Positions 29,152 to 53,200 of a DNA stretch of 64,000 nt are shown here, in pieces (position 1 is the stretch's first letter; every line of letters begins with the position of its first letter). A program made the position numbers and the translations under genes. Source of the stretch: Mytilus trossulus (Eukaryota); contig NC_086375.1 in assembly GCF_036588685.1 (NCBI RefSeq), forward strand, positions 17,422,001 to 17,486,000, written 5' to 3'. The notes under the pieces are model-generated. The model was not told the origin of the DNA, did not search any database, and worked only from the letters and a program-made list of their open reading frames with translations.

Positions 29152-31610
29152 TTTGTAGTTTTAAACACACACATAAACAAATAAACACATGAATAAATAA
29201 ATAAACAAATCAAAACATTTCAAAATAAATATCACAATATTCGGATATACATATCCGACCTTATAAATAGAGATATGATATAGATATGTAATTAAATGTC
29301 AGGTACTATATACAAGTCTACACTCGATCTACTACCGTGCCAAGTTTTTTTCTTTATGGATTAAGATTTGCATTCATCTGACGTACTTCTGCAAACAAAA
29401 CCCCTTGTATGTACTCTTGTGTGAATGAACTACTTCAATATTTAGATTATTTCACTTCGACAAACATGTATAATATTGGTAGGTGATAAAATTCGACAGT
29501 GTTTTTATTCACCTCGAATTCAATCACTTTTTCAAAGTTTTGTATTAAGTATTTTAATATCGGAAAGTAGTTATATTGGATTAACTTTTTAAGCAAACAG
29601 TCTAGTATATTACATATAATTTGATATTAATGAAAGTGGATTTCTCTCTATTTGCTAATGAGTCATAATGATTTTAATACTGTTACTTTTTCAAATGTTT
29701 TTGGTTTGTATGAGAAATATATACAAATGACTTTGACCTGATCGGTCAAGATTAAAACAGCTACGTATATAGCTTTGTAGCAAGTGAAGCTTTGGAAATT
29801 TGCAGTATTTATTTGAAATCAAAACTTATAGTCCTAACAATTAAGACATGACAAATCCTTGTTTTCCGTAGTATAAACAAATATGACAGTTTTGACGGTT
29901 AAGTAATTAGGAATTTTGACTGCTTTAATTATAGCTTCTCGAAAAATCCTTTTAAGTGAACTCAAATTAGTTGCTGGTAAAATGATGCTGCGTTACTTAT
30001 AGTTGTTATATATATTGGAGAAATGATTATGCTTTTTCAATTACTTGTTCTATAATTTTATTTTCATTTTATTTTGAGACTGTGGTTTCATCTCAGTAAT
30101 TTCAACACCTGGAGGAATTTGTTTGTCTATTCTATCTTAATTTTGAAATTAACTACAGGTATCTGTATCTGTTTACGGTGTCTGTATTTAAAAAGAGTTA
30201 TGAATATGAAAATAATATTATTTCATTTGTGTGTGTGCAGAAATTAGTTATTTGCTATGCATAAAAAGTGTCTACGCATTCAGATTAGCTGTGTAAAATT
30301 CTAAACACTGAATTACAAATGAGAAAATAATAAAACAAAAACAAAAACAGAACCCCGTTTGATTACACAAACTAAGCATAAAACCAATCCATTCAAAGTA
30401 AGATTATGACTTATATGTCAGCGTTATCTGCAGGAGTTCGAAGTTAAATGATTGAGATGCCTTACTTATTCTTTATTATGTAGATCTATGATGAAATAAG
30501 TTTTTATATGTAATACATATGCTTTTGTTTAGTTCTAGATATCATATGATGGAGAACATAATTCTGCAAAACTTTGACAAAATTCGATTCTCATGATGTG
30601 TACCAATAAAACTAAATAGCAACGAAGAAGAGGAGAGACTAGAACGTAGATCATCATGTGTATTCTGGCTGCACATAATGTACATTGTTTCAATCATTTG
30701 CAAAACAAATCAAAACAATTATGCTTTAATATATCGAACATAAAATTAAATGACATAAACAAAACATGAATTCATTTCATTCATAGTACGGTCTTTTTTG
30801 AAGATGAAAAATAAGTCATAATTAATTCGGGCAAAGTATACGTAATTGTGAGGTATTTGGAGGTATTTCGGATTTTCACAAAAATTTGTAAGCATTTAAA
30901 ACTCGTCAAAATCGCCTGATTAACGTCAAAAGGATAAATATAGCATTTGTATTTCAAAATATAACATTTCTAAACAAGACCATAATGTAATTGCGATGAC
31001 TATTTTCATCCTAATGTTATATTCAATTTATATGAGAACAAAGGTTCTCCTTTTCTCCAAGGAAATCCATTATTCTCGGTATGTAGAGTGAAAAAACACA
31101 GAAAGGACAAAATAAGTGAAACGTAAAGACATCGTCTAGCTGCAAAATCGCAGTGTTTCATGTTAATTTTGACATACACTTTGATACTCGATGTTTTCGC
31201 AGAAAAAAAGTACCATTTTTGAATATTTTGTTTACTGAATTTATAGAAATAGTCAGTTATTGAATGTGAAAATAAATTTACTTGCCGCTTTAACGAACCT
31301 TCTAAACATATTCAGGTCAGTGTTTTCCCTATATTTTTAACTGATTAAATATTTGGAAATTTCAACGCTACATGTATCCTTCGATTGTCAGAAGTAGTTC
31401 AATGAAGTCTAATTTTCAAAAAAGGAAATATAAAGAAAATTACCGACTATTGCGTAAGATTGAGTTTTACCAAAACAAAATTCCCAAACCTTATTACCGT
31501 TAAACATACAAGTGGAAAACCAACATATGGTCAAATTTTGTCAGCTCTGTACATTTGATTCGATAAGACATCACAAACGGTATCTGTGTTAACCAGTCCG
31601 GCCAGACACA

Positions 31611-31767
31611 ATGAAAATCCATGCTTTGGCATTGTGTGCTATTTTGCAATTTCCTTTCTGTTTGAGTCTGTCTGTAGAAATTTTGAAGCCAAACAATACC
31701 GGACCAGAAGCTGCACTAATTATCGTCCCTGGAGCGTATATTTCAGGATCAGCATATAAACCTTTAG
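31611..31767 (+). CDS. Hydrolase A exon 1
   Basis: ATG...CCT TTA G|gtaagt, 157 nt. Confidence 0.9.
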
Positions 31768-34700
31768 GTAAGTTAACATATAAGTTAAAATTAGGGATTA
31801 TTACTTGAACAAAACAAACTTGTATTTCAGACTGCAACGAGTTGTAACAAAACAAAATACTGAGGTTTAAAATCCACAAAAACATTTTTTGACTTTTGAT
31901 CTTGGGAATATAGTTCTGATATTGAACAAGATTAAGGTAGCATGATTTCATAAAGGAAACATTGATATGATAAAAGAAACGGTACCAAACAATTCTTACA
32001 TTCTTTTTTGAATTACACCCCCTCCCACCCCCCACCCCACCATTTTTTCTTTTTCAGACTAGGTAACACGAGCAAATAAAAATATGCAAACAAAGATCTG
32101 CATGGGGTCTAGTGCTACACATGATTTTGGATGATGATGGATCATACAGAGATTTTAAAATGAGGAATCGCTGTTCACCTTTAAAAATTTTGAAAACATA
32201 GGCTTAACTGAGTTATCTAATTCGCAAAATTATAATGGCAAGATTTGAAATAGTTGCCATAAATTGTGAAATGCATTTTCTTTACTGATATAATAGTATA
32301 TTCTGGTGAGGGATTGAAAATACTTCTTCGGTACTATACTTTAGAATCACGTCAAGTTGTTGCTCTGATTAAGTGCTGCATTGATATATTTATATGATTA
32401 AGAACTGTGATGCATTTGTTTATGCGGAATAATCAGGGATGATGCCGTTTGAGCAAGTGTCCACCAAATATTTTATTGGGCAACGGGCGACAAATGTGCA
32501 ACTTAATTTTCTTCTTTTTAAAAAAATATCCTTTCTACAGCAAAATCGTGCAGATTTATGAATAAAAGTGATTTCCCCCGTTATTCAACATTAATTTTAA
32601 GTGGCAACAGGATACCTATAAAACGAGAACTAAAGTTTCAAACCACTTGTACTTTAATAATTTTATGTTCTAACATTTAACTTTATCGTTTGCGGTGATA
32701 CATTTATAACTTACTGCTTAGCTATAACTTACATTTTTCCACAGCCGAAGTTATTCAGAAGAAGAGTAATCTGAAATTATGGGTTGCCTTACTAGACGGA
32801 TTTTTTAATAAACTTGCTAACCCACTACAGCTTCCTATAGTATTTAAAAAAGCTGTGAATGAGTTACAAAAAGCAGGTTATAAAGGGAAGAAAGTGTTCT
32901 TGGCTGGCCATAGTCTTGGAGGTATGCATATTATATTATAACACTGTATTTAATTATTGATAGCTAAATAAATATTTGATTGGTTTAGACTAGTACCCGA
33001 CGTAACATTGAACAGATCCTGACGCAAGACATCTACCTTGCACGAAGTAAAGCGCGTTGAAATAAGATATATTTAGCGTTTAAACGCATCCACACAGCAA
33101 ACTCATTGTCAATAGTATGAGTTTTTAAAGCTTAGTCAGGATATACGTATCTAAATATTGATAATATCTACTGTATTTGTGGATGAAGGGTGGTGGTTAT
33201 CTCCGGGTACAACGGCATCCTCCACAAGTAAAATCTGACCTGTTTTGCATAAAGTGGCACCAAAACATCAACAGATAAATTAAAACATGTGTGTTATAAA
33301 ACTTAGTCATAGGAAAAATTACATGTTCTGAGTAAATTAGTTAAACGTTGAATAGTAGTGTTAAAAACATCTATCAGACCGAACCTAAAATATCCATCTC
33401 CTCTTTTTTAAGTTGAAATATCATCAACTATATGTGAAGTTAATTTAATTAAAGGTGAAGTTGCAGCCCTTTATGGACAAAAAGCGAACCATATTTTAGA
33501 TGGAGTGTTGTTGTTCGCATCTTACATTACTAAGAACAACAAACTAAAAGAGTATCCATTCCCGGTTCTGACCATAAGCGGTGACCTAGATGGATTAACT
33601 AGAATAACAAGGATCGTAGATACATTCGAGTGAGATTAATTTTTAGACACTGTGTTTTTGTTTTTACTTTCATGTACTGTTTAATAAATGTGTACGTTTA
33701 AATGCTCCTCTGGTACCTTTCCCCCTCCTTTAAAGTAACAGCAAATATAAGCCATACAATAATAGTAACCATATAAATGGAAAAGACGTTGAAATAAAAA
33801 AAAAATGAAAATAACACTGTAATACATTAAAAATCAAAATTGAAAATGACTTACTAGTAATAAGAATCCTGTATGGAACCTTGTATAACTGAGCTCGTCC
33901 ATTTAGCGTATCTTTCTTGTTAATTTTACTATATTTTCCAATAAAGGTTTAAAAAGGGTTATATTGTTTATCATTTTTATTTTCAGGGAACTCCAAGAAG
34001 ACGTAAAAAGCGACCCAGAGCAAATATACAGGACACCTGTAGTAGTAATGGAGAGTATAAATCATGGACAATTCGCTTTGGGTCCGTTACCCAAACCTGT
34101 AACTGATCATGATCTAAATCCAGAGGTATCTCAATCTGTAGCATATAATACCATAGCTAATTACTCGAACGCATTCATGGTAGTCGTCCGAAATGAAACA
34201 GATACCAATGTAACTGAAGCTGAAAACATCTTAGAAGACGGTCATACGAAAACCGCTGCAATGATGCAGGTGAATATAATTATGTTCTATATTTTTAGTA
34301 AAATCTGTCAAAACAATGAAAAAGTATTGGTCGTTATCTGTGTTAATTAGTATTTTAGTAGAGTTTTTTTATATTTATACTTATGTATTCTGACCATTAA
34401 ATTGTTAAACATTATAATGTGGTTAACATAGTCGTTGAGGAAAGTTATTTAGAACCTTATAGTCTGTTCTCTGGCACAATCCTGTTGTTCTGTCTAGTAA
34501 ATAATGAGAGGTACTCACAAACAGATACCGGCCCGTCTTACATAAAGCAACGACCAATCCATTAGCTCATAGAACCACATCATATTTATGATAAATTATT
34601 AATAAATGCAAATGGCGTTATATAGCAAAGATTCGAGAACCCCAAATTTCATTAAGGGATTAAGAATTAGTTGTGGATATCTAATGATTGCATCCCCATA

Positions 34701-35332
34701 TAAATCCATGGCAAAGTCAATGATTTGCCGAGGGAAACCACAAAAATAATTCAAACTCAAACCAAAATAGTGGACACAAAATGACATTATTTGTTGAAGA
34801 TTCAAAGAAAGTTTCATCAGATATATAAAGGATAGATGAGAAGGAAGTATTCTGATAATGAGTGTGGTTTTGTTGTTCAAACTTTTGTTTAGTTTATTTT
34901 TTTGTATAGCTGTTGATCTTGGTTACTTTTTCCTAAGCGAATGTTTTTTTATGCTCTTTAACGATTAAATATTGTATACTTTGTATATGTGTCTGATAAG
35001 GATCTTGTACTATAAGGGAAATCAATGCTTTCACATTTTTTGTGACAATTTGAATTATAGGTTTAATTCGAATCAAATTATTCTTTTCATATTCATGTTT
35101 ATACTTCAGTCAAATTATTCTGTAAAAACTAATGTCTTAATCCCGCGATCTGTTTATAAATTTAATTGTATTTGAACATGACATTACTTTAGGAGCGCAT
35201 TAATTATGTTTTATATCATTTTAGCCTCTCTCAAAAGTAAAAGCTCTTGATCAAAACCCAGATTTTACCTCACACTGGACTAACACTGCTCAAGAACTCG
35301 TTGTCAGTCTGAAAAATATAACAGATGTTGAG
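31611..35332 (+). CDS. Secreted alpha/beta-hydrolase-fold protein, copy A; catalytic triad intact; only exons 1-5 found (300 codons)
   Basis: Exons 31611-31767, 32745-32921, 33455-33629, 33987-34269, 35225-35332 splice in frame. Signal peptide, IVPGA, GHSLGG, SGDLDG, NHGQFA. No exon 6/7 homologue before copy B. Confidence 0.85.
32745..32921 (+). CDS. Hydrolase A exon 2 (GHSLGG nucleophile elbow)
   Basis: ttccacag acceptor, gtatgc donor, 177 nt open. Confidence 0.9.
33455..33629 (+). CDS. Hydrolase A exon 3 (SGDLDG)
   Basis: aag acceptor, GA|gtgaga donor, homologous to B/C exon 3. Confidence 0.88.
33987..34269 (+). CDS. Hydrolase A exon 4 (NHGQFA)
   Basis: ttttcag acceptor, CAG|gtgaat donor. 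Confidence 0.9.
35225..35332 (+). CDS. Hydrolase A exon 5
   Basis: PLSKVKALDQNPDFTSHWTNTAQELVV...; 108 nt as in B and C. Confidence 0.9.
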
Positions 35333-36968
35333 GTAATATTATTTTCTATAATTTTTTTTTCAGTAGAACTTGTATAGTAGAAAATAATAAAATGGCAGAA
35401 GATAAATAAAGGCAACAGCAGTATACCGATGTTCCAAAATCATAAGTCGATAGCAAAATACAAATCCAGGTCACAAACAAAACCGATCCATGATCTAAGT
35501 GGATTGTATCCTACAAAAGTATTTGATGTATACGTAAAAATGCATTAGCAAAAATACCGAACTTCAATATAAATTCAACGAAGGGGGAGCAAAAAACAAT
35601 AGATCCCATTTAAATAATAATAACGTTATTCAGATATCATTTCTAGGTTTGGACGTATTGGTCGCTTTGCATTGTAATACCTGATAATTAAAATCGTATT
35701 AGGATCGGTGTATTTATAGCAGGATATGCTGACCATGTAATTTTCGTATCATTCTTGCGATTCGAGCTTATGTTACTTTTCCGGACTTGTGTTTCAACTA
35801 ACGATCATCTCGACACCAACTCAGTAATGTTCTACTGATGATTTCGGGTGCTATATGGTTTAATTAGTTCATCATTTTATTACGAACGCACACTCAAGCA
35901 GAGATCATCATATCTAATAATTTAATAAACAAACACTACAAATTATCTTTCACAAACTTGAACCCTGGATAACCAGTTGGAAAATTCAATGCTATAAGAC
36001 TGAATAAGCACTATTCGGTTGTTTTCTCCTGGAAATTCGGCTTCATCAACCAATAAAAGACTGTTATACACATGATCGTTGAAATAACCAACAACAACTT
36101 AATTTAGTAACTACCGAATCGAAAAAGTTAAAAGGCCAAATAAATTACGAAGTAGATTATTCAGGACCTATAAAATTGTAAAAGGTTTGCCGATTGAAGC
36201 TTATCAATCAATACCTATGATGTACAATTATGGGCTGAGCATCTCTACTTTTAACGAAATAATAAAGGTTTCTTTTGACATTTGCTCTGTATTGCAATAC
36301 AAAGATAATGTTAAAGGGGTCAGAGATATATGTCGAATTGATATGGAATATAGTTGCTATAAATAAATTAAATGTTAAAGTGAACGAAGTATAAAAACTA
36401 TTCTTGCAAAAAAATCAACTAGTGATGCAGTTCTTATACTTAATGCTACGGTTCATCATTAAAAGATTAATTGAACTGATCACCTGAATTAAAGGTTTAT
36501 CAAATGCTGGAGCTATACTTGTAATCAACAATGAGTTGTAGCAAGGGTATAACGAACGTCGATAAGGAAATTGTTTCTAGGAATGCATCACACTTTTATG
36601 GCATGCTGTAACCTGTCGTAAGACTTTTATATCAGAATATTTTTTTACATATAACAAGTCACCACAAATTAATCAAATATACAAGTCTAGTACGCTTGAC
36701 GCGCGTTTGTCTTACTAGGGACGCTGAAATAGTGATATCGGTTGTCGCATTGTTTTTTTTCAACACTGAAAATAATAACTGTTAAATTCCCAAGGCCAAG
36801 TCTATAGTCCAATCTGGTGATAATACCAATGACGCTCCACGGTATGGTGTACAAGTCATCACATGAGGACGATATGATATGAAATACATAGATATGAAAT
36901 ATCCTATTATAAAGATAATCACCTGATAAACAAAGATACACGTATTTGTATTTACTTCTTTGAACAAA

Positions 36969-37125
36969 ATGGATACAATATTCAAAATAGCTTTGTTTTC
37001 TCTGTGTATTCAATCATGTTTGAGTATAAAAGTGACTGTTATGGCTCCAAACAAAACTGGATTGGAAGCTGCAATAGTGATAGTCCCTGATTCGTCTATA
37101 TCAGGAGCAGCATATAAACCTTTAG
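36969..37125 (+). CDS. Hydrolase B exon 1
   Basis: MDTIFKIALF...AYKPLG|gtaaga, 157 nt. Confidence 0.9.
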
Positions 37126-40100
37126 GTAAGAGGACTACACAATTTAAGAATAAACACCGTAAGATGGTGACAAGGGAACGTCACCATCTAAAAACGGACA
37201 ATTAACGATAGGAAATGAAAAATCATCCCTTTTATCATAAATTTCAGTATTCAGCTTTCCGTTAGTGATATAGATATCAAGATCGAGGAAAGGGCAGTGG
37301 TCATTGTTAGTATTAGCTTTATTCAAAGTAAGTTCAGCAGGATAAACTTCATTAATATACATACTGAAGTCGTCATTATTGAGAGCCAAAATATCATCTA
37401 AATATCTAAAAGTATTATTAAATTTGTTTATCAGATGTTGTTTTGATGGGTCTTTGCTTATTTTTGTCATAAATTGTAACTCATAACAATACAAAAAGAG
37501 GTCCGCAATAAGTGGTGCAGAGTTAGTCCCCATAGGAATTCCGATAATCTGACGATATACGGAATCCCCAAAGCGAACAAAAATGTTATCTAGTAAATAT
37601 TCAAGGGCATATATAGTATCAAAGCATGTCCAATTAACATAGTTTTTTTGTTTATTGCTACTAAAAAATGACCTAAAAGAGTTTGAACATATATATTCAC
37701 ATTCTGATTTTTTGAATGCCCATTTAATTAGGTGTGTGAATTTTTTCTTAATGAGAATGTGAGGCAATGTGGTATACAGGGTAGAAAAATCAAAACTTTG
37801 AACAGATTCAAAATCACCAATATAAGCATGCAATTTATCAAGTACTTCCAACGAGTTCTTGACACTCCAAAAGTAATTTATTCCACTATTTTCGAAGGCC
37901 TTATTTGTACAATTTATTATAAGGTTTTTAATTGTACCAATGTAGCTATATTTAGATTATCTCACTGGTTAAATTGTAAGGATCAACAAAATTTATACAA
38001 AGCAATAAAGATGATAAACAATACATGGCTGAGAGAATAATTTATATTTATATATTATAAACTTCAATGTTGTGATGTTAATAAAATGTATAGCATAAAG
38101 AGAATACAAACAAAGCTGGCTTGAATATACAAGCATAGTTAGATAAATGCATACTTGTTGGTTTATCTTTTTTAAGATAAGACATAATATCGCATTAGTA
38201 TAAAACCCAAACAATAGAATGGATTGTTAAGGAATAACACAAATACAATAAACAATACAAACATGATACATGGATAACACAATCCATGTTTTCTTCTCTT
38301 ATTCAAATGCGTGACAACTTGCCTCTCATCAAATTTGCATCTGTATAACTATATTTAGAGCACTGAGGAAAAAACCCTGTTTTTATATGTATTCATACTA
38401 GAAAAAAGATTTAGAGACAGTATACAAAACATAGCATAGCAAATTAAACACTGAAAAAATGTCACTCTGGATGGTTGAGGTACCGGTCGTGTTGCTCATG
38501 AAGGGACAAATCGGCGATAAATGTAATTCGACGATATCACTTTCGAGGAAAATGGATGGAATTGCGCTACGAACAACGGACATATCCATCGTCATTTTCG
38601 AACAACAGATAGTACATAACGGTTGTTCAAAGCAGGACTTCCGTAAAATATACGATGAAATGACTCATACCTCACCTTTTTTTTTATAACTTTATTATAA
38701 GCAGCAATTGTCTATAATGGAAATCATGATAGGAATGCAGGCTGCGGAGTAACGTACCAGCTCGGATTTATATTCCCTGTATGCAGACGCTGCTTAAATG
38801 TTATCAAATAGAAACGGCAAGTTCACAATTTGGAAGCTGAACTCACCTCTTTTGGCGTAATGGCTAATCTCAATCAAATCTTCATAGTCCATTTTGAGAT
38901 GTACTTTGAGATACGAAACAGACATAACTGTAACTGGTGTATCGTTGTATTTCAAGTTTGATGATATATAAGCGTTCAACATAGTCACCAAACTTATTTC
39001 GGCATGGGACACATCTGAATAGTAGAACGTAAAGATTTAGCAGGAGGAAATATTTTCTTTTTTGTTTTCCCTCAAAACTACATGTGTGAAATGTGCCTTT
39101 GTTTGAATAAAGGAACAATTCGATAAGAAGATGACCTCAGCGGGTTCCGATATGAATGATAATTGTTTGTTGAAAAACACGCCCTAAAACGTTACATAAG
39201 TGTTGTCAATAAAAAACCAAGCATATTGCTAATGTCTGTTTCATACATTGTTCTATTGAATCAGATAGTTAGTTTATAGATTATGAATTGTCCCATCCTA
39301 AAACAAGATAATTCTGTCTACGATGACCAATGTTTGAATGAAATGAAGTAATATCTATTCGTTTAATCTGTCTGTTAGTGTGTAAACTGATATATTGTGT
39401 AAAGGGTATAACAGTCAAATATAGTTAATATTATTGCTATAGCTATAACTATAGCTAAATCAATAGAAAAAGTCCTATTTTTATTCATGACACTCAGTTT
39501 GTATTGGTAGAGGAAGCCGGAGAGAACCACCGACCTTAGGTTGCAAAACTGACAATCATAGTCAGTTCTCTCACATATTATATATTTGACTAACGTGCAA
39601 ATATGTAAGCTCTGTCAACAATTCTAAGCTAAATTCATTTGGATAGATAACTTTATTACTATTATTAAATTGTAGAAACAAGACATATACAGTTCTGAAA
39701 AAAAGTTAAATCACAAAAGTACTGAACTTAGAGGAAAATCCAATCGGAAAGTCCATAATCACACGGCAAAATCAAATAACAAAACACATAAAAAACGAAT
39801 GGACAAGAACTGTCATATTCCTGACTTGGTACAGGCATTTTCAAATGTAAAGAAAGAACTTGTAGATGCATAATGAAAAAAAAGGGAAAGTCATAATGAA
39901 TAGTAAAATCACAATAATACTGAACTCCGAGGAAAATCCAAACGGAAAGTCCCTACAAAATCGTAATATCAAAATCTCAAACGCATCAAACAAATGGATA
40001 ACAACTGTCATATTCCTGACTTGGTACGGTGATTTAGTAATATCGCGCTCTATTCAAGACTTATTATTTGCACATTCTTGTTTAGTGTTAGTAATGTTAC

Positions 40101-43100
40101 TTAGCTTACAATACATATCATATGGATGATGTTTCAGCTAACGCAATACAGATTCGAAGCGCTCTGAGCTTATGGATTGCAATTTTAGAGACGAAACCAG
40201 GTTCATTAGCATTCCCTTTTGAATTCAACTATGCATGTAACGAGTTAGTGGATAAAGGTTTCCGTGGAGCTAAAGTATTTCTAGCAGGCCATGGTGATGG
40301 AGGTAGAACACATTTTTATGCTTCTTCACTTTTAATCTTTCTCATCATGTTCTCTTTCAGCAAAGGTATTACAGAGCAGAAGTACTATGAGATTATGGGT
40401 TGTGGTTTTAGAGAGCACACCAACTTCACTTTTATTCCCTATTAAATTCAACGGTGCTTGTAAGCAGTTGCTGGATGCTGGCTTTGAAGGCGATAAAGTC
40501 TTTCTAGCTGGTCACGGCTTAGGAGGTAGACTCAAATTATGGCATGATTACATTTATGATAAAACTTCTAGAAAAGATTCAAACCAATTTTACTAAAGTC
40601 TAATCATACAGAATTTAAAATGTTGTAATATACATTCGAATTTAAACCTTGTGCATGCCTTTTCCGCTTCTCATTTTATGCACAGTGACATGATTGCAAA
40701 AGAAATCCATTTCCATAGTTAATTTATGTACAATAAATTGCTTTATATTTTCATAATTCTAGACGTTCATTACTGAGAGAAGTTTGCAAAAGAAATAGAA
40801 AGTTTCCGGAGAACTCAATTGCAATTGTGAATACACTCTGATCTTTGTTACTTTATATAAGTCTCCGTTTTTCTGTTAGTAGTGGACTTCACATTTTCTT
40901 TTAACAATAACTGGATTTGCATTAAAGTTTAATAGTAATGTAAAAATATCTGCAACTTTAAAGAAACGAAAACAGAATCCTTAAAGGTTATTTCAATTCA
41001 AGCTATCTGAATGCTTTCTTATGAAATATCATTATTTTATTTTGTTTTCGTGTTTGTGCATATTTTTTTGAATTCATTTTATCCTGCAATTCGACAATTA
41101 ATTAAGACCTACTTACTATAATTGCTATGTTTGAATAGTGAACACCTATTTCATTTCCCAATATCCTGCTTCTGTTAGAGACGAACGGTGATATTATAAT
41201 TACTATAAACGTGACAGTTCAGGGGTCATAAAGGGCTGCATTTAAAAATTCCCCTGCTCATGAAAAAATAAAGATAATATTTTTTAATGTTTTACTGTAA
41301 AATTGCAGGATAGAAATAAAAGAGTTAAGTTACATGTTAAAAAACAACACTAACAGTATACGTACTCGCTACGATGAAACAGATGAAATGTTCAATAAAA
41401 AAGGAGAAGGAAACACCATATGGTCAATGACAATTCATAAGTCAAAACTACTATGGCAAAAAAACGAAAAGACAAACAAAAATCTAAGGAACACGAACTC
41501 AATATAAAACAGAGGTGATTTTAGACTTTCTGTAAGATAAAGCAGTTATGTTCTACATGTAACACCCGTCGTGCTGCTCGTGTAATGTATAAATCTTTTT
41601 ATAAACCTCTTTCGGTGTTGTCTCAATAGGGGAAATATGACGTCTGTGACAATTGGAACATATCCATGGTCATCTCTGACACATTTAAAAGCTAATTAAC
41701 GGTCGACCAAATGATGTTGTTGGTAAAACTTATTATTTTTATACATATATCGACAATCTACGTATGTTTAGTGTGTACATTTTTGTTTTAATAAATGAAT
41801 TAAATGCAGCTGAGAACGCATCAGCTATTTGAAGCAACGTCAATACGATAAAAGCACGGTTTTTGGGTTTTGCAAATAGGTTTCGTTTTAAATGTTTAGT
41901 ATATATTTGATATCTTTTTATGATAAACCAATGTTAAAAGAGAAAATTTATTTCATAGGTCATAGGGCATCTAGTTATGGCCATTCAATCTTCCATAAGA
42001 ATCGACTTGATGGAGTGCTGTTGTTTTCGTCGTTTCTCAGCGGAAGTTATCGGCTGAACAATTATCCATACCCAGTTCTTACAATTAGTGGGGACTTAGA
42101 CGGAGTAACGAGAGTAACAAAAATGGTTGATGCATTCGAGTGAGTGATGATTTTTTGTTATAATAATGATAGTAGTTAGGTAATATGAAGTTCCTTACAT
42201 ATTCGATTAACACGATTAACATATTGGTGTTCAGTGAAATAACAACATCTAATGTGGGATTACGAGGCGCCGAATGGGACTCTTGTGGTTTTGTAGACAA
42301 AATTCATTTTTGTCATGAAAAAAGTCAATTTTGTCAAAAAAGGTATGCAAGTATAAACTTATTTGCATACAAAATTGACTTTTGTTACCGGATATGGAAA
42401 TTAAAACACAAAATTGACTTTTGTGAGACAAAATTGACTTTTGTGACAAAATTGACTTTTGTGAGACAAAATTGACTTTTGTGAGACAAAATTGACTTTT
42501 CTGAGACAAAATTGACTTTTCTGAGACAAAATTGACTTTTGTGAGACAAAATTGACTTTTGTGAGACAAAATTGACTTTTGTTAGACAAAATGTACTTGT
42601 GTGAGACATAATTCAATTTGTCAATTTTGTCTCACAAAAGTCAATTTTGTGTCACAAAAGTCAATTTTGTGTCACAAAAGTCCATTTTGTATGCAAATTA
42701 GTTCACAGAATCGAAACTAAACTAATTCGCATACACAATTGAATTTTATCGCAGGTAACAAAAGTCAAGTCTGGGATACAAAAATTAGTTTTGTAATGAT
42801 AAAAGTAACTTTTGTCCACTTAAAGATAATTTTGCATGACAAATTTTAAATTTGTAGTATTCTACAAATTTTGTTAAACTGAACTCATTTTTGTTGATCA
42901 AAACTCACTTTTGTCCGTACAAAATTGAATTTCGAGTACAAAACCACAAGAGTCCCATTCGGTGCCCCGTAGCGATACTATCAAAATTTGATCTGAGATA
43001 ATTGTATCAAAATCTCAAACGATACAATTTAGATTTTCATTTTCATTGATTTTATTACTTTTGCTTTCTTACTTATTTTGCACGATTTCATCAACCATTG

Positions 43101-45668
43101 TCACCTTTTAAATCAAATTTCAGAGAGTTGGAAGAAGATTTGATACTAGCTCCAACACAAAAATACACTACACCCGTAATTGTAATGGAAGGTATGAACT
43201 ATGGACAGTTTGCATCTGGTACCCTCCCACCAGCTGTAGCGAGTTATGACTTGAAACCAGAAATTTCCCAAAAAGATGCATATGATGCTATAGCTAACTA
43301 CACGAACGCATTTATGTTGTATGTACGGGACACAAATGTATCAGAAGCAACATCTATGCTCGAAGAGGGATATTCGAAAACACAGTCGATACTTCAAGTG
43401 AGTTTGAATCATCACCTCATTCCCAGAATTTTGAAATTATTATGATTGTTAACTTGTTTTTGTATGATCATCCACACTTTGTTAAGCCTTATAGGTGACA
43501 TTAAAGACTATTCACTTCAATCGAGAGAAACCAATCGGCTTAATTTCCATGTTTTTAATTTAAAAAAAGTAGCTGAACAAGAATGTTCCGGCACTCACAA
43601 ATAAATATAACTATTTTGACTTCTAAATATCATTTTGTAAGAATCTGCTTTTCACACCAGTACCATTGATGTAGCCTTTCTCTGATTTGTATCTTTTGAG
43701 GAAATGGAGGTAGACATAATGATAAACATAAAATTCAATCCTTAAATAAAAAAAAAAAATGTTTTATCAAAATCATTGTAGTACCAAAAAAATAAGGTTA
43801 TAGAGCGATTAAATGGGTTTTTTTTTTCAAGAAAAAATATAACGATTTGTTTTTGTTTGTTATTTCAGCCCCTTTCACAAGTGAAAGCTCTTGATGATAA
43901 TGAAGAATATGTCTCACATTGGACAAACACTGCTCAGCAACTGATAGTGGGTCTTCTGGATACCTCACTAGTAGAGGTAAAATATAACACATTGATATTA
44001 TCATATAGATATTATATCGCTTAATATAAAGCATGTAGCATTTCCAATTTTTAAAAACGAAATGTTGATCAAAATATTTACCAAATAGATAAAATGGACT
44101 GGTAGAATTTGTTTCAAGTGGAGACAAAACACAACAACATTTGAATAAAGTGGAATTTAAATGTTGAGAAAATGAATTACCATTTAAAGTCATTAACATT
44201 AACAAACTTGCGTGGTGTCCATTGTTTCTTAATTGACTATATGATTATCATAGTAAAGATGTTTACAGGGTACTAATTATTGATAATTAATACACAGATT
44301 CTTCATCAAAACATTACAGCGATCCTTTTAGAAGTGTTATTATCCATATTTGTGTTTATCTGTCGGAGTGTATTACGTTTGGTTAGTATATTGAAACTGT
44401 TAGCTTTTGTAATATCATTTTTTCTAATTCTGTTTATTTCAGTTCGATAATACAGAAGAAACACCATCACAGCCTAAATCATTTCGATTTCGCAAACCGC
44501 ACCAGTCGGATATATTAAAAATCAACAGCTCCACTGAAGTGTATTTTCCTAACACAGATGGTACCAAGATTCCTCAAAGTCCCCTACAACTTAAAGCAAC
44601 CATGACAAATCAAAGAGCTATTAAATCACTTTTGCCATCTGCACCTTTTGGTGCCCCTGCTACATGTCAAGATATCAATCAGGTATATTACTGTTAATCT
44701 CAGAATTATTTAACAACAACAGAAACAGTAATAGTAATAATAATAATAATAAGATTGCTTATATTTGGAAGCAATCGTTTCTTTCATGATAATATGAAAG
44801 CATGCCGAGAAGCTACTATGTTGACTAAAATGGAACAGCGCACACACCAAAACCATTAGTATAATAATTTGAAATTGTCAATGACACTGCAGCGCTTTGC
44901 AGATTCTTAGCATGCGTATATCCCTAGAACTAGGCGGTTATTGTGTCATACTTTACCTTGTTTACTACCATTTGTCGGTAGTGGTGTTGGCGGACGGTTA
45001 AATCTGGTTGGTAACACTTTCACAATTTTCAATGTGAACTTTCTAACAACGATATATTCACTTAGATATATTGATATTATGAAATTGCTTTTACACACTT
45101 AATCTCTGGCCGGGAAAAGCCGGAACATTCCTAAATTAAGTTAAATACTAGTAGATTGGAAGTCGACATAAAGAACAGAAACCCAATGTTTAAAACAGAA
45201 TCGGTAAACTATATTGAATAGATTTATAATCAATACGGTAAATAAGTGTTACCTTTAGGTGCATTTCCTGATGTAATTTGTTGTTGTGTTGTGACAAATG
45301 ACGGACACTAGACATCTTCATTTATTCGTGATAACAATTTGTTTTATTTAATATTGTAGGATGCCTTTACACTAGCTTTTTCGAAATCTTCAGCCACAGC
45401 AAAGGCTAGATACCAGTCTAAAGGAAGGCCAATACAATTTCTTCCAGACGTCAATGTTACATCGAAGAACAGTTGGAACCAATATGGAGATCTAAAACTT
45501 AACTACAACATAACTGGTCTTTTTGTTCAGGCTTCACGTTATATATCCACTAAACCATCAGGGAGAGACGATGACTGCACCTTGTTATCGCCCTTTAGGG
45601 CAATGGAATGGATATATGTAGATTCTTTGAAAAATACAAAAGAACAAACATATACAAATAATACATGA
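36969..45668 (+). CDS. Secreted alpha/beta-hydrolase-fold protein, copy B, 477 aa with either exon 2a or 2b; predicted catalytically dead
   Basis: Exons 36969-37125, 40138-40302 or 40361-40525, 41959-42139, 43124-43397, 43869-43976, 44443-44682, 45360-45668, all GT-AG and in frame. GHGDGG/GHGLGG, NYGQFA, C-terminal CTLLSPFRAMEWIYVDSL. Confidence 0.88.
37147..37940 (-). mobile_element. Penelope-like retroelement reverse transcriptase fragment, open frame, in intron 1 of hydrolase B
   Basis: SFDFSTLYT, GIPMGTNSAPLIADLFL, RYLDDIL, FLDLDI, YDKRDDFSFPIVN motifs; truncated at both ends. Confidence 0.85.
38400..39410 (-). mobile_element. Degenerate Penelope-like element (RT C-terminus plus 3' tail)
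   Basis: YAKRGEFSFQIVNLPFL resembles YDKRDDFSFPIVNFPFL; tail resembles the repeat at 20412-20727. Confidence 0.65.
39705..40028. repeat. Two tandem fragments of the Penelope-tail repeat; inverted copies at 11285-11570, 14990-15150, 63830-64000
   Basis: aaatcacaa(a/t)a(g/a)tactgaact...aactgtcatattcctgacttggtac repeated. Confidence 0.75.
40138..40302 (+). CDS. Hydrolase B exon 2a (GHGDGG)
   Basis: gtttcag acceptor, gtagaa donor, 165 nt, phase 1-1. Confidence 0.85.
40361..40525 (+). CDS. Hydrolase B exon 2b (GHGLGG), tandem duplicate of 2a
   Basis: ttctctttcag acceptor, gtagac donor, 165 nt, phase 1-1. Confidence 0.85.
41959..42139 (+). CDS. Hydrolase B exon 3
   Basis: tttcatag acceptor, GA|gtgagt donor; SGDLDG. 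Confidence 0.9.
42261..42971. mobile_element. Foldback-like MITE with internal 20-bp tandem array
   Basis: 35-bp terminal inverted repeats (33/35 match); about 10 copies of GTGAGACAAAATTGACTTTT at 42408-42610, inverted copies at 42620-42690. Confidence 0.85.
43124..43397 (+). CDS. Hydrolase B exon 4
   Basis: tttcag acceptor, CAA|gtgagt donor; NYGQFA. Confidence 0.9.
43869..43976 (+). CDS. Hydrolase B exon 5
   Basis: 108 nt, PLSQVKALDD... Confidence 0.9.
44443..44682 (+). CDS. Hydrolase B exon 6
   Basis: 240 nt open, PQSPLQLKATMT...CQDINQ|gtatat. Confidence 0.9.
45360..45668 (+). CDS. Hydrolase B exon 7 (terminal)
   Basis: DAFTLAFSKSS...MEWIYVDSLKNTKEQTYTNNT-TGA. Confidence 0.9.
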   Translation, partial: DAFTLAFSKSSATAKARYQSKGRPIQFLPDVNVTSKNSWNQYGDLKLNYNITGLFVQASRYISTKPSGRDDDCTLLSPFRAMEWIYVDSLKNTKEQTYTNNT

Positions 45669-46720
45669 CAGTGATAAACTTTAAAAAAAAAAATACATCA
45701 TCTCTAAAAATTAACAACTTTCAATACATGGATACATGTAATATATTTTTATTTTTCACACATTCTTATATTTTCTGTCATTCCTAGTGATTGTTGAATG
45801 TTTACAGTTTTTCACATAATGTTGTTAAAGTGTGGTTTTTTAATGTTTTTAACGCATATCTTTGTCAAGGAATCCTGTAAGTCAGTGCCTGGTTTGTTGA
45901 TGTCTATCATATATGATTTTGGTTTTCAAATTTGAATTGTTGTTAATTCGCGTTTGAATTGTTTAACATCTTTACAGTTGACAATACGGAGTTTGTTCTT
46001 CTTGTTTAATGTCATACTGTAATTGTAATAGCTTATATTTACATTACTTGAACTCTAGTGAAAAGTTGTATATTAGCAACCATGTTAAATCTCCTTATTT
46101 GCTTATTCGTAACCCGGATCTTCTTTGCTTTTGAATATACCCGAATAGTAAAGGCTTTCAAATTTGGAGGTTTAAGTGTTTTTTATGAATTTAAACCGAG
46201 ATTGCGCTTACGAGTGACGGCACATGCATTTGTCTTAATACCTTAATACATAAGGTCGCGAACTTTCGTTATATCTCGGTTCTTCTGTGGTTGTCTTTTC
46301 ACTGATACTTTTTATATCGTTAATCTAATGCGATGTCAGAAGAAGAACTTTAAGCAAGAACAACAGAAACACCGAACTGCAACAAAAATAAACGTTAGCA
46401 TACATATAAACGGACTATTTGATAACAACTGCCATCTTTCTAAATTGGTAGAGGAAATTTTAAGCAAATATAATGGGTTGAACCTAGTTCTATGGCTAGC
46501 CCAACCTCCCGCAATATATGACAATGTTAAAAATGGCAATATTTCGTGACAGGAATACAGTATAACCAAACGCAAAACACTCAGCACAGAAAAATGCATA
46601 ACTACATAATATAATTATACATAAACACATGTATTACCCACAGTATAACATCAGACAGCTTCCTTTAACGACAGTATACATTTATAGAACACCACAAATA
46701 ATGACGGATTTTGTGACTTA

Positions 46721-50214: not shown

Positions 50215-53200
50215 GTAAGGTCAAATAACATTATAAATTACATATACGACTCTCTCTGACATTTGAATAGAGGGCCAAGGTACGACATAATATGTCTAAC
50301 TAAGACAAGTATATAATAATTATATAAATGATGAACTTTATAACTGATAAAAGAAAACTAACAGTTGTTTTACGGAATTGATAACCGTTTGTGAATTACG
50401 ATCTTTGTTATATCTCCAAGTTGATGCAATATTTCATAATTTCAATTTCTTATCATGATTTCAAAATCCTTGATCATGTTGATAGGGGATTGTTGCTAAC
50501 AAAGAAGTTATTACATCAAGGGTGCCATATGTTTGGAAGGATCAGCTTTCTCTTTACAAAATGGAGATTAAAACTGGTTTTGGTGAATATCGTGTTGATT
50601 ACAGCATCGCAATATGTTTGGTTATTTAACAACACATCATGTTTTTTGATTATTCATATTTAAAACAAAATGCTCTCCAAAAAGGCAGCTGCCAGATTAC
50701 AACGCGTCGGCTTTTCACGTGAACACTATTTTTACACATAACTGTATTCATAGACACCCTGAAATCGGTAGACGTAGCCGGGTACTTGTACATCCCAACA
50801 GCAAACAAGTAAAATCACAAAAATACTGAACTCCGAGAAATTGTAGATAAAAAAGTTCGTAATCAAATGGCAAAAGCTCAAACACATCAAATGAATTGAT
50901 AACAAATATCAAATTACTGACTTGGTACAGGAATTTTCTAATGTAGAAAATGGTGGATCAAACCTGGTTTTATAACATGCTAAACCTCTCACTTGTATGA
51001 TAGTCGCATTAAATGTAATTATAATGACAACGATAAGTAAACAAAACAAACAGACATAGTAGGTATAAATGTAAAAAAATAGGGCTACAGCAGTCAACAT
51101 TGTTTTATTATTTTAATCACTATAAACAAACATTTCCCATGTGATAAAATACAACGACAGGATACATAAGAACAGAGTCACGTCATCGGCCCAAAGAAAC
51201 AGAATACACAGCCACAGCATATGCGTAGCAATAATTTATTTTCAACGACAAGAATACACAAATTATATAGAACACTCAAATGACGGGATGTATAAGTACA
51301 GAGCCACGTCAAATGGAGTCCACTAAAAAAACCAGACTAAACATTAAAAGTAAAATTCATGAAGATACATAAAAGAATACTACACAACTTATTGAGATGA
51401 TAAACAACGTCAGTACCAAGAATCTATACTCCAAGACCATCGTGTATTCTTTTTGAAACTGATTCGAACTTTTTTTCAACAAGGTCTTGGTACCTTCCGA
51501 TGAAACTTTTTTTTTAGAAAAAGGACGAGACGTTCTTTGACATAACACTGGTTCATCAACTTTTTGCTCAAACACTGGTGACGTTTTACAAAGTCTGAGT
51601 AGTTGCTGTATGCTTTTAAATACCGAATAAGTTGGGAAATTTATATCCCATATGCAGGTGAAGTTGGTATAGCTACTAAGGTTGGGGAAATTGACAATTT
51701 AAAATTTGAAATCGTCTCGTTTGTCATAGATTATGGTACTGAGAGGTGTATATCAAATTCGAGGTATAAGTCCAAATATGAGCGGAGGAAGTCGTGTTTG
51801 TTGTTTCTTTAATTTCTATGGAGGATATATTAATGGAACTTAATCAGAAAATTTTGGATTATAAATGGGGAAAAAAACATCATCAAAATATCGGAATGTG
51901 AATTTAAATGACCAGGCTTTTTTTCTCTTCTTGTATTTTACAAGTGTCTAAAGGAACTCCGATTCATATAAAAATAAGAAGAGATCAGCAAGGACAGGCA
52001 CACTGTTTGTTCCAACAATGCCGACACTTTGTTGAAAACGTTTACCTCCAAATTAAACAAATAGGTTGTCAATTAGAAACTCAAGCAAACTGTTCACTTG
52101 TTCCTCTGAGTAGCATGTTTTACCTTGTTTGGTCCCTATTAACATAAAATGCCGTATGGTATTCCAAAGTAATATATTTATATCGTATGCTATCATTTTT
52201 ATGTTAAAAAGCATTGTGGATTATTACTTCAAACCCATTTTTAATTTCACACGGGGAATGTTGGTATACAGGGTATATACTGGTTAAACAAGAATCTGCC
52301 AAAAATTACGGAGAATCGGTCAGATTTTCACTTTAGTTTTTGTTGGTTATCTATGTTTTATTTTATTTTTCCGTTTTTAAAAAATATCTTTGTTTTTGGT
52401 CTCTTTAGAACGAAAGCAGGATAAACGAGCAACTGCTAGGTTTTTATTTACAAATGATTTAAATATTGCAGCTGAGGAGATCATACGGCGAAGTGATTTG
52501 AAACTATGGGTTGCCATATTTGATGAACAGCCATTTCTTGCTGACATGCCATTTGCATTTCTATCGGCATTTACACATTTAAAAACTCATGGATACAGAG
52601 GAAAGTCGACTTTCCTGGCTGGACATGGAGATGGAGGTTAGATTATATACATTATGGTTTTACCGAATGACTTGTCCATATGAAATATATATAGATGTAT
52701 TAAAGTGGTACCTACAGTACATGATCAAAATTAGTGTTTGTCAAACTGCTATATAACCAATGAAAACTTTCTGATAAAGTGGGTGGTTGGTCAATTTTTT
52801 TTGAAATTTACATATTTTCGACAAAACTTTATGAAAATTATAAGAGCCAAATTAATATTTGTCAAGGTGTTGGGTACAACCTAAAATAAATAAATTGTAA
52901 TCATTATGGGTCACAGAGGGGGTGAAGACAGAAGTTTTATTAGTATTCGGTCTGTCTATATATGACTTGAATATGATAAAAAATAATACAAAAAAGCATT
53001 AAATTAGATGATCCAATATCAGAATAAAACAAAAGTAAGATCGATTTTGTGTAACCAACATGTATAAAATAAAGTATTCAACAGATACAGTTACGTCTGT
53101 CTCATATCTGGAAAAGGCGTGAGAGTAAGACAAATAAGAGTTCAATGGCCTACATGAGGATCCATTTTTATTCATGGAAAACAAACTGGAAAGACTTCAA

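What the first reader, a model, noticed from the sequence alone, without database searches (positions are those of the whole stretch)
40138..40525. Tandem duplicated exon 2 separated by only 58 nt: candidate mutually exclusive splicing of the active-site module
Seen: two 165-nt phase 1-1 exons, both open and with GT-AG sites, strongly diverged in protein (ANAIQIRSALSLWIAILETKPGSLAFPFEFNYACNELVDKGFRGAKVFLAGHGDG versus AKVLQSRSTMRLWVVVLESTPTSLLFPIKFNGACKQLLDAGFEGDKVFLAGHGLG). The spacer is 40303-40360. Established: a very short donor-to-branch-point distance is a known steric mechanism enforcing mutually exclusive exons, and including both copies would duplicate core strands of the fold. Inference: gene B makes two isoforms differing in the loops and elbow around the former active site, i.e. 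switchable ligand specificity in a secreted pseudoenzyme.
Basis: partly seen in the sequence, partly recalled or inferred. Interest (0 to 1): 0.85.

Follow-up and report, generated by a model that had tools for sequence, protein, structure and literature searches.

The report
Mutually exclusive duplicated exon, mussel pseudo-hydrolase
A mussel gene for a secreted, catalytically dead esterase-like protein has two copies of one exon and uses either copy but never both, an ordinary kind of alternative splicing that public gene annotation already lists.

Summary
Exons 40138-40302 and 40361-40525 are both 165 nt, phase 1-1, open and AG/GT-flanked, with a 58-nt spacer. They share 69% nt and 57% aa identity.

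The window is Mytilus trossulus LOC134710278. RNA contigs from four runs (three coded organisms) show e1-e2a, e1-e2b, e2a-e3 and e2b-e3 joints. None shows e2a-e2b or e1-e3. RefSeq already lists the two 477-aa isoforms in M. trossulus, M. galloprovincialis and M. edulis. Both cassette types also occur in the M. coruscus/M. californianus lineage. So mutually exclusive use is supported.

The protein is an alpha/beta-hydrolase fold-5 relative that lacks the Ser (Gly105) and the His (Tyr194). The cassette carries half of helix A, strand 4, helix B, strand 5 and the elbow.

The steric mechanism fits the geometry: every branch-point candidate lies 44 nt or less from the e2a donor, NMD cannot be the filter, and the spacer stays at 55-58 nt. 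It is not proven, because the minimum spliceable intron in mussels is unknown. "Switchable ligand specificity" is untested.

This is a new member of a well-known kind. The scan has flagged at least eight other candidate exon pairs elsewhere in this genome, none at this locus.

The parts
36969..37125 (+). Exon 1 of gene B (LOC134710278): start codon, signal-peptide-like N-terminus, strand 3. Donor is TAG|gtaaga, phase 1.
   Evidence: RNA contig X3 record 17 joins it to e2b, and an X1 joint links it to e2a.
37126..40137 (+). Intron 1 when e2a is used (3012 nt). It extends to 40360 (3235 nt) when e2b is used. It contains a reverse-transcriptase-like ORF remnant on the minus strand and a highly transcribed ~195-nt tandem repeat.
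   Evidence: Joints 37125/40138 and 37125/40361 with GT..AG. Repeats.
40138..40302 (+). Exon 2a: 165 nt, phase 1-1, cassette residues 53-107, elbow GHGDG. Weak polypyrimidine tract (0.50). This is the minor form in the contigs examined.
   Evidence: joints to e1 in X1 and to e3 in X5; contigs X5 record 29 and X13 record 14; isoform X2.
40303..40360 (+). 58-nt spacer between the e2a donor and the e2b acceptor. It has a strong pyrimidine tract (0.86), and all yUnAy branch-point candidates for e2b lie inside it.
   Evidence: No joint removes it in four runs. It is 55 or 58 nt in five further genomic ORF read-throughs.
40361..40525 (+). Exon 2b: 165 nt, phase 1-1, alternative cassette for residues 53-107, elbow GHGLG (keeps the family's ancestral Leu106). 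This is the major form in the contigs examined.
   Evidence: e1-e2b-e3 in one contig of X3; e2b-e3 joints in X1, X3, X5; loose ends in X13; isoform X1.
40526..41958 (+). Intron between e2b and e3 (1433 nt). It is 1656 nt measured from the e2a donor.
   Evidence: Joints 40525/41959 and 40302/41959.
41959..42139 (+). Exon 3: helix C, strands 6-7 and the conserved catalytic-Asp motif (GDLDG, D155).
43124..45668 (+). Exons 4-7 of gene B: 43124-43397, 43869-43976, 44443-44682, 45360-45668 including the stop. Exon 4 carries Tyr194 in place of the catalytic His. Exons 5-7 encode the C-terminal domain of unknown function.
   Evidence: (per-exon match to P0002).

Best explanation
Gene B of a four-gene tandem cluster in Mytilus trossulus (LOC134710278) encodes a secreted 477-aa alpha/beta-hydrolase fold-5 protein that has lost its nucleophile Ser and its catalytic His. 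An old tandem duplication of a 223-nt unit (exon 2 plus its splice sites) made two homologous 165-nt exons. [quoted passage not shown]

Exon 2b has the stronger acceptor and looks like the default. Exon 2a is the minor alternative.

Double inclusion is most likely prevented sterically. The branch point that serves exon 2b must lie inside the 58-nt spacer, so it is 44 nt or less from the exon 2a donor. If so, a spliceosome cannot assemble across the spacer, and the e2a donor must pair with the exon 3 acceptor instead.

Shown here: the exon pair, its junction usage, its conservation, and the dead-enzyme status. Inferred: the steric step, and any functional difference between the isoforms. My odds are about 0.9 for mutual exclusivity and about 0.55-0.6 for steric enforcement.
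For: Exon pair: homologous, same length and phase.

Junctions in RNA contigs:
- e1-e2a in X1
- e1-e2b in X3, plus loose ends in X1 and X5
- e2a-e3 in X5
- e2b-e3 in X1, X3 and X5, plus loose ends in X13
- both forms in the same run in X1, X5 and X13
- no 40302/40361 joint and no 37125/41959 joint

Public protein models: one-or-the-other 477-aa isoforms in M. trossulus, M. galloprovincialis and M. edulis. Both cassette types are present in the M. coruscus/M. californianus lineage. There is no model with both cassettes.

Selection: e2a vs e2b gives dS 0.71, dN 0.33, omega 0.46. Across Mytilus lineages the cassettes are 85-91% conserved, versus 85% for the whole protein.

Structure: both isoforms fold identically with pLDDT about 91.

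Steric mechanism:
- All yUnAy candidates for e2b lie in the spacer, 15-41 nt from the donor. The geometric ceiling is 44 nt, below the <50 nt criterion used for human MXEs (PMC5740500).
- 165 nt is 3 x 55, so neither double inclusion nor skipping would trigger NMD.
- The spacer is 55-58 nt in six genomic versions.
- All other introns of the paralogues in the window measure roughly 350 nt or more.
- 17 myosin exon gaps in this genome are 151 nt or more.
- 263 sequenced M. galloprovincialis introns have a minimum of 100 bp (PMC4101229).
Against: - Contigs drop rare variants, so low-level double inclusion or skipping cannot be excluded (tool caveat).
- No branch point is mapped.
- 56-58-nt introns are spliced in humans, flies and worms (PMC8363638 abstract; PMC4165533), and the mussel minimum is unknown.
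- My sample of intron sizes is small, and the published one is biased against short introns.
- A short spacer is also the automatic by-product of a small tandem duplication, so its shortness alone does not prove function.
Confidence: 0.6

Rival explanations
1. The exons are mutually exclusive, but exclusivity is imposed by something other than steric hindrance. Candidates are competition between a strong e2b acceptor and a weak e2a acceptor under trans-acting regulators, or competing long-range RNA structures. On this view the 58-nt spacer is only a relic of the small duplication unit.
For: The acceptor strengths differ markedly: pyrimidine fraction 0.86 vs 0.50. Duplication of a 223-nt unit gives a short spacer automatically. 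Introns of about 56 nt are spliceable in other animals. Weak complementarities exist between the e2a donor and 41549-41566, and between the e2b acceptor and 41927-41947.
Against: Local RNA folding is no more stable than shuffles, z = +2.3. The inverted repeats are short, 76-78% matched and AT-rich, which is chance level. Competition alone does not stop the e2a donor from using the adjacent strong e2b acceptor. The spacer has stayed at 55-58 nt over a divergence of dS 0.71 in a transposon-rich genome.
Confidence: 0.28
2. Only exon 2b matters. Exon 2a inclusion is splicing noise or a decaying duplicate with no separate function.
For: e2a has the weaker acceptor and lower contig depth: 12 vs 90 in X1, 23 vs 59 in X5, and absent in X3. 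Depth of contigs is a poor measure of expression.
Against: e2a is intact and open in M. trossulus, M. edulis, M. galloprovincialis and M. coruscus, with 85% aa identity between the lineages, like the rest of the protein. Omega is 0.46. e2a is present in RNA of three coded organisms. Its isoform folds as confidently as the other.
Confidence: 0.08
3. The pair is not strictly exclusive. A minority of mRNAs contains both cassettes (in-frame, 532 aa) or neither.
For: Both outcomes keep the frame, so nothing would remove them. Contigs cannot show absence.
Against: No such joint appears in four runs. No such model exists in the annotations of five species. Both cassettes encode the same core strands, so a double product would not fit the fold.
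Confidence: 0.12

Closest known systems
Alpha-tropomyosin exons 2/3 and other steric-interference MXE pairs (human criterion: donor to branch point < 50 nt; PMC5740500)
   Same: Two adjacent alternative exons with a default downstream exon that has a strong pyrimidine tract. The branch point of the downstream exon is too close to the upstream donor. Here the distance is at most 44 nt.
   Different: In tropomyosin the branch point was mapped and the spacing was tested by mutation. Here nothing is mapped and the mussel's minimum spacing is unknown. The tropomyosin details rest on my own knowledge plus the summary in PMC4165533.
C. elegans let-2 exons 9/10, egl-15 exons 5A/5B, bet-2, gly-5, gly-6 (PMC4165533)
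   Same: Homologous 3n-length ME exons in an invertebrate. NMD cannot police them, and the intervening intron is shorter than the species' minimal intron.
   Different: Worm spacers are 14-30 nt against a known minimum of about 40 nt. Here the spacer is 58 nt against an unknown minimum.
Tandem duplicated exon substitution events in human genes (PMC9741552, PMC8373072) and OGDH exons 4a/4b with restricted intron size (PMC7969005)
   Same: An old duplication with both copies under purifying selection. The isoforms are identical except for one homologous segment, and the intervening intron is kept short.
   Different: Those cases sit in well-studied active proteins with known functional differences. 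This one sits in an uncharacterised, catalytically dead, lineage-specific paralogue.
Alpha/beta-hydrolase fold-5 proteins (PF12695); nearest solved structure AroC 9eh6, plus carboxylesterases and cutinases
   Same: Same fold (Foldseek probability 1.0). The conserved GHSLGG elbow, GDLDG Asp and NHxQF His are present in most of the 60 relatives and in paralogue A.
   Different: Gene B has Gly105 and Tyr194, so it cannot act as a serine hydrolase. It also has an extra C-terminal domain of about 220 aa with no recognised family.

Membership tests
Mutually exclusive exon pair derived from tandem exon duplication | Adjacent homologous exons of equal length and phase | tested here: met
   Both are 165 nt and phase 1-1, with 69% nt and 57% aa identity and E = 1e-19.
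Mutually exclusive exon pair derived from tandem exon duplication | Each copy is spliced to the same upstream and downstream constitutive exons | tested here: met
   GT..AG joints e1-e2a, e1-e2b, e2a-e3 and e2b-e3 in RNA contigs. RefSeq isoforms X1 and X2 agree.
Mutually exclusive exon pair derived from tandem exon duplication | No mRNA with both copies or with neither | tested here: met
   None in the contigs of four runs and none among the protein models of five species. Contigs cannot exclude rare forms.
Mutually exclusive exon pair derived from tandem exon duplication | Both copies intact and conserved in related species | tested here: met
   Both cassette types are present in M. trossulus, M. 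edulis, M. galloprovincialis and M. coruscus. e2b is also present in M. californianus.
Steric-interference type of MXE | Distance from the upstream exon's donor to the downstream exon's branch point is below the spliceosome's minimum | tested here: inconclusive
   Candidates lie 15-41 nt from the donor and the geometric ceiling is 44 nt. This is under the human 50-nt criterion, but the mussel minimum is unknown.
Steric-interference type of MXE | Branch point mapped inside the spacer, and lengthening the spacer allows double inclusion | not testable with these tools
   Needs lariat mapping and minigene experiments.
Steric-interference type of MXE | Exclusivity does not depend on frameshift and NMD | tested here: met
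   165 = 3 x 55. Both double inclusion and skipping keep the frame.
Competing RNA structure (docking/selector) type of MXE | Conserved complementary intronic elements next to each alternative exon | tested here: not met
   The fold of 40060-40600 is less stable than shuffles, z = +2.3. Only short, 76-78% matched AT-rich inverted repeats were found. Conservation could not be tested.
Alpha/beta-hydrolase fold-5 (PF12695) serine hydrolases | Sequence match to the family model | tested here: inconclusive
   P0002 scores 26.6 bits against a cut-off of 27. Paralogue D scores 27.9 and orthologous-family members score 40-58 bits.
Alpha/beta-hydrolase fold-5 (PF12695) serine hydrolases | Alpha/beta-hydrolase fold | tested here: met
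   AF2 pLDDT 91.5. Foldseek hits to AroC, carboxylesterases and cutinases at probability 1.0. The profile hits 9eh6 at E = 5e-10.
Alpha/beta-hydrolase fold-5 (PF12695) serine hydrolases | Ser-Asp-His catalytic triad | tested here: not met
   Among 60 relatives: Ser105 in 51, Asp155 in 60, His194 in 55. Gene B has Gly105, Asp155 and Tyr194 in both isoforms.

The most novel reading that the evidence does not exclude
The cassette swap retunes a binding surface of a secreted, catalytically dead alpha/beta hydrolase. The surface would comprise helices A and B, the loop after strand 4, and Asp versus Leu next to the former nucleophile. One mussel gene would then make two ligand- or partner-specific binding proteins. 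The short spacer would be actively maintained as the device that keeps them exclusive.
Probability: 0.2. Interest if true: 0.5.

Novelty: new member of a known kind. Interest (0 to 1): 0.3.

Why it matters
It adds a clean, RNA-supported invertebrate example of a 3n-length duplicated exon pair, where NMD cannot explain exclusivity and the intervening intron is very short. That makes it useful for asking what the minimal spliceable spacing is in molluscs.

It also shows that a lineage-specific dead-enzyme paralogue is still being diversified and kept under selection, which hints at a non-catalytic binding role.

The splicing kind is textbook, however, and the two isoforms are already in RefSeq for three Mytilus species. 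The gain is modest.

Tried and rejected
- NMD as the filter against double inclusion: rejected, because 165 nt is a multiple of three and both aberrant products stay in frame.
- Competing RNA structures: no excess folding, only chance-level inverted repeats, and no Rfam family in 36000-46000.
- Pfam on single exons: nothing except a weak Abhydrolase_5 hit on e3.
As a substitute I used ORF read-throughs of e2a plus the spacer found in public assemblies.
- Literature on minimal intron size in molluscs: nothing usable beyond Table 4 of PMC4101229.
- Accession searches for the family in papers: no hits.
- ESM Atlas on the C-terminal domain: no usable hit.
- Dating the exon duplication relative to the gene duplications: the 55-aa tree places genes C and D with e2a, but a clade of e2a plus e2b is not rejected (p-AU 0.195).
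Exons were searched by reference one at a time. Full-length comparisons used the public protein records that the tools returned (P0002, P0171 and others).

Full report
**Observation**

- Window 40138-40302 and 40361-40525 are each 165 nt.
- Each is preceded by ...tttcag and followed by gtaga.
- Both are open in the frame set by the phase-1 donor of exon 1 (TAG|gtaaga at 37125) and the phase-1 acceptor of exon 3 at 41959.
- 114 of 165 bases (69%) and 57% of residues are identical, with tblastn E = 1e-19.
- The similarity extends into the acceptor and the first bases of the donor, so a unit of about 223 nt that included the splice sites was duplicated.
- The spacer 40303-40360 is 58 nt.

**Gene and locus**

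The window carries three tandem paralogues on the + strand.
- Gene A (exon 2 at 32744-32923) has the elbow GHSLGG.
- Gene B is the gene in question.
- Gene C (exon 2 at 52471-52638) has the elbow GHGDGG.
- A fourth paralogue, gene D (AAHGDGG), lies about 70 kb beyond the window. The whole 1.3-Gb genome holds no further copy of this exon.

Only gene B has the exon in duplicate.

A profile of the four exon-2 copies, searched by reference, retrieved a 477-aa protein that is 100% identical to the window's exons. This protein is XP_063426640.1, LOC134710278 isoform X2 of Mytilus trossulus.

Gene B's exons are:

| Exon | Coordinates |
|---|---|
| e1 | 36969-37125 |
| e2a or e2b | 40138-40302 or 40361-40525 |
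| e3 | 41959-42139 |
| e4 | 43124-43397 |
| e5 | 43869-43976 |
| e6 | 44443-44682 |
| e7 | 45360-45668 (includes the stop) |

These were matched exon by exon. Full-length work used the public records that the tools returned.

**RNA evidence**

Contigs of four public runs were laid on 36900-42200. Three of the four are only guessed to be RNA by their record. However, their contigs carry GT..AG joints and leave the introns empty apart from repeats. The runs come from three coded organisms.

Joints seen:
- e1 to e2a in X1.
- e1 to e2b in X3. One 403-nt contig reads e1-e2b-e3. Loose ends that spell the tail of e1 lie in front of e2b in X1 and X5.
- e2a to e3 in X5.
- e2b to e3 in X1, X3 and X5, and by loose ends in X13.

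X5 holds two 220-nt contigs, one per cassette. Each is flanked by about 28 nt of e1 and e3. This is the two-branch pattern that alternative cassettes leave in such assemblies.

No contig joins 40302 to 40361, and none joins 37125 to 41959. Both forms occur in the same run in X1, X5 and X13. Contig depth favours e2b (90 vs 12, 59 vs 23, 10 vs 0), but this is a poor measure of expression. The tool also warns that contigs drop rare variants.

**Public annotation and conservation**

The 90% cluster of the protein holds the following models:

| Species | e2b form | e2a form |
|---|---|---|
| M. trossulus | isoform X1 | isoform X2 |
| M. galloprovincialis | X1 | X2 |
| M. galloprovincialis (2018 models) | VDI66352 | VDI66353 |
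| M. edulis | XP_071161906 | XP_071161907 |
| M. californianus | present | not modelled |
| M. coruscus | transcript-derived protein | gene model |

- No model has both cassettes.
- Between the M. edulis complex and the M. coruscus/M. californianus lineage, e2a is 85% identical and e2b is 91% identical. The whole protein is 85% identical.
- Between the two copies, dS is 0.71, dN is 0.33 and omega is 0.46.
- The RNA variants seen in organisms B and C (I66V and A97D in e2a, V67A in e2b) are the residues of the M. edulis and M. galloprovincialis proteins.

**What the protein is**

- Relatives of about 480 aa occur in molluscs, a brachiopod, echinoderms, a hemichordate and protists. All are uncharacterised and named 'alpha/beta hydrolase fold-5 domain-containing'.
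- Pfam gives Abhydrolase_5. Gene B scores 26.6 bits against a cut-off of 27, and relatives score up to 58 bits.
- AlphaFold models of both isoforms are confident (pLDDT 91.5 and 91.3) and have identical secondary structure.
- Foldseek and a profile search place the N-terminal half among small esterases: AroC 9eh6, carboxylesterases and cutinases.
- In 60 relatives the triad is Ser105 (51 of 60), Asp155 (60 of 60) and His194 (55 of 60). Gene B has Gly105 and Tyr194, as do its orthologues and the paralogues C and D (Phe at 194 in C). It is a dead enzyme.
- The N-terminus looks like a signal peptide. This is an inference, because no predictor was available.
- A whole-protein tree gives A | (B | (C, D)) inside Mytilus, all strongly supported.

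**What the cassette changes**

Residues 53-107 comprise the C-terminal half of helix 46-59, strand 63-69, loop 70-77, helix 78-91, strand 99-104 and the elbow 105-107. Including both cassettes would duplicate core strands.

Of the 24 differing residues:
- none is in strand 5;
- four are in the loop after strand 4 (71, 72, 74, 77);
- one is next to the former nucleophile: Asp106 in e2a and Leu106 in e2b, where Leu is the state in 53 of 60 relatives;
- the rest are in helices A and B, strand 4 and distal loops.

**Mechanism**

165 nt is a multiple of three, and the phases match. Double inclusion and skipping would both stay in frame, so NMD cannot be what hides them.

The e2b acceptor has a strong pyrimidine tract (0.86 pyrimidine) against 0.50 for e2a. 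This fits e2b being the default.

All yUnAy candidates for the e2b branch point lie in the spacer, 15-41 nt from the e2a donor. Geometry caps the distance at about 44 nt. A human survey used < 50 nt as the criterion for steric interference (PMC5740500). In C. elegans, 3n-length ME exons with introns below that species' minimum are never joined (PMC4165533).

The spacer is 58 nt in the window and in one other public genomic version. It is 55 nt in four more.

For comparison:
- the other introns of the paralogues in the window measure roughly 350-3000 nt;
- 17 adjacent myosin-head exon gaps in this genome are 151 nt or more;
- 263 sequenced M. galloprovincialis introns had a minimum of 100 bp, from a method biased against short introns (PMC4101229).

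Against certainty:
- introns of about 56 nt are spliced in humans (PMC8363638 abstract);
- no branch point is mapped;
- a small duplication unit gives a short spacer for free.

No evidence for competing RNA structures was found. I put mutual exclusivity at about 0.9 and steric enforcement at about 0.55-0.6.

**Comparison and novelty**

This is a standard tandem-duplication MXE pair. It is closest in logic to alpha-tropomyosin exons 2/3 and the short-intron worm clusters. It sits in an uncharacterised dead member of the alpha/beta-hydrolase fold-5 family.

The two isoforms already exist as automatic RefSeq models in three species. I found no paper on them.

The scan's own notes list at least eight other candidate MXE pairs elsewhere in this genome. 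These are unchecked and serve only as context. None is at this locus.

Verdict: real, ordinary in kind, of modest interest. The functional reading (switchable ligand specificity) remains untested.

**Limits**

- Only one reads call was allowed, and it used contigs rather than raw reads.
- Organism and sample names of the runs are coded, so tissue specificity could not be addressed.

Noticed in passing
window 39555-40085: Two tandem units of about 195 nt (39701-39840 and 39899-40035, 86-88% identical) lie directly upstream of exon 2a. RNA contigs cover them at very high depth in all four runs (up to about 5500), with many rearranged joints. This looks like a highly transcribed dispersed repeat. 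There is no Rfam match.
   Followed up: partly
window 37144-37851 (- strand): A 235-aa ORF in intron 1 carries a reverse-transcriptase-like YLDD motif. It is transcribed in all four runs (depth 34-330) with several fixed differences, so it is a repeat family member. It has no Pfam hit.
   Followed up: partly
window 31605-35338 (gene A): Gene A is the only paralogue with an intact Ser and His. In this window it matches only residues 1-302 of its 488-aa M. galloprovincialis orthologue. No exons for residues 303-488 are found before gene B starts.
   Followed up: partly
window 40296-40298 vs 40519-40521; 52471-52638; L005 1465-1668: The residue after the lost nucleophile is Asp in e2a and in paralogues C and D. 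In e2b it is the ancestral Leu. The 55-aa tree groups C and D with e2a. The exon duplication might therefore predate the B/(C,D) gene duplication, with later loss of the e2b type in C and D. This is not resolved (p-AU 0.195).
   Followed up: partly
window 42408-42690: A 20-nt minisatellite in intron 3 of gene B: 10.4 copies at 93% match, plus an adjacent 3.5-copy array.
   Followed up: no
protein P0183 (M. coruscus CAC5381906.1): This public gene model carries the e2a cassette, but from about residue 447 it runs into an unrelated coiled-coil-like tail. It is probably a mis-joined 3' end.
   Followed up: no
window 42139/42140: Exon 3 ends at 42139 (GA|gtgagt), one base earlier than a simple ORF reading suggests. 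RNA loose ends confirm the junction to exon 4 at 43124.
   Followed up: yes
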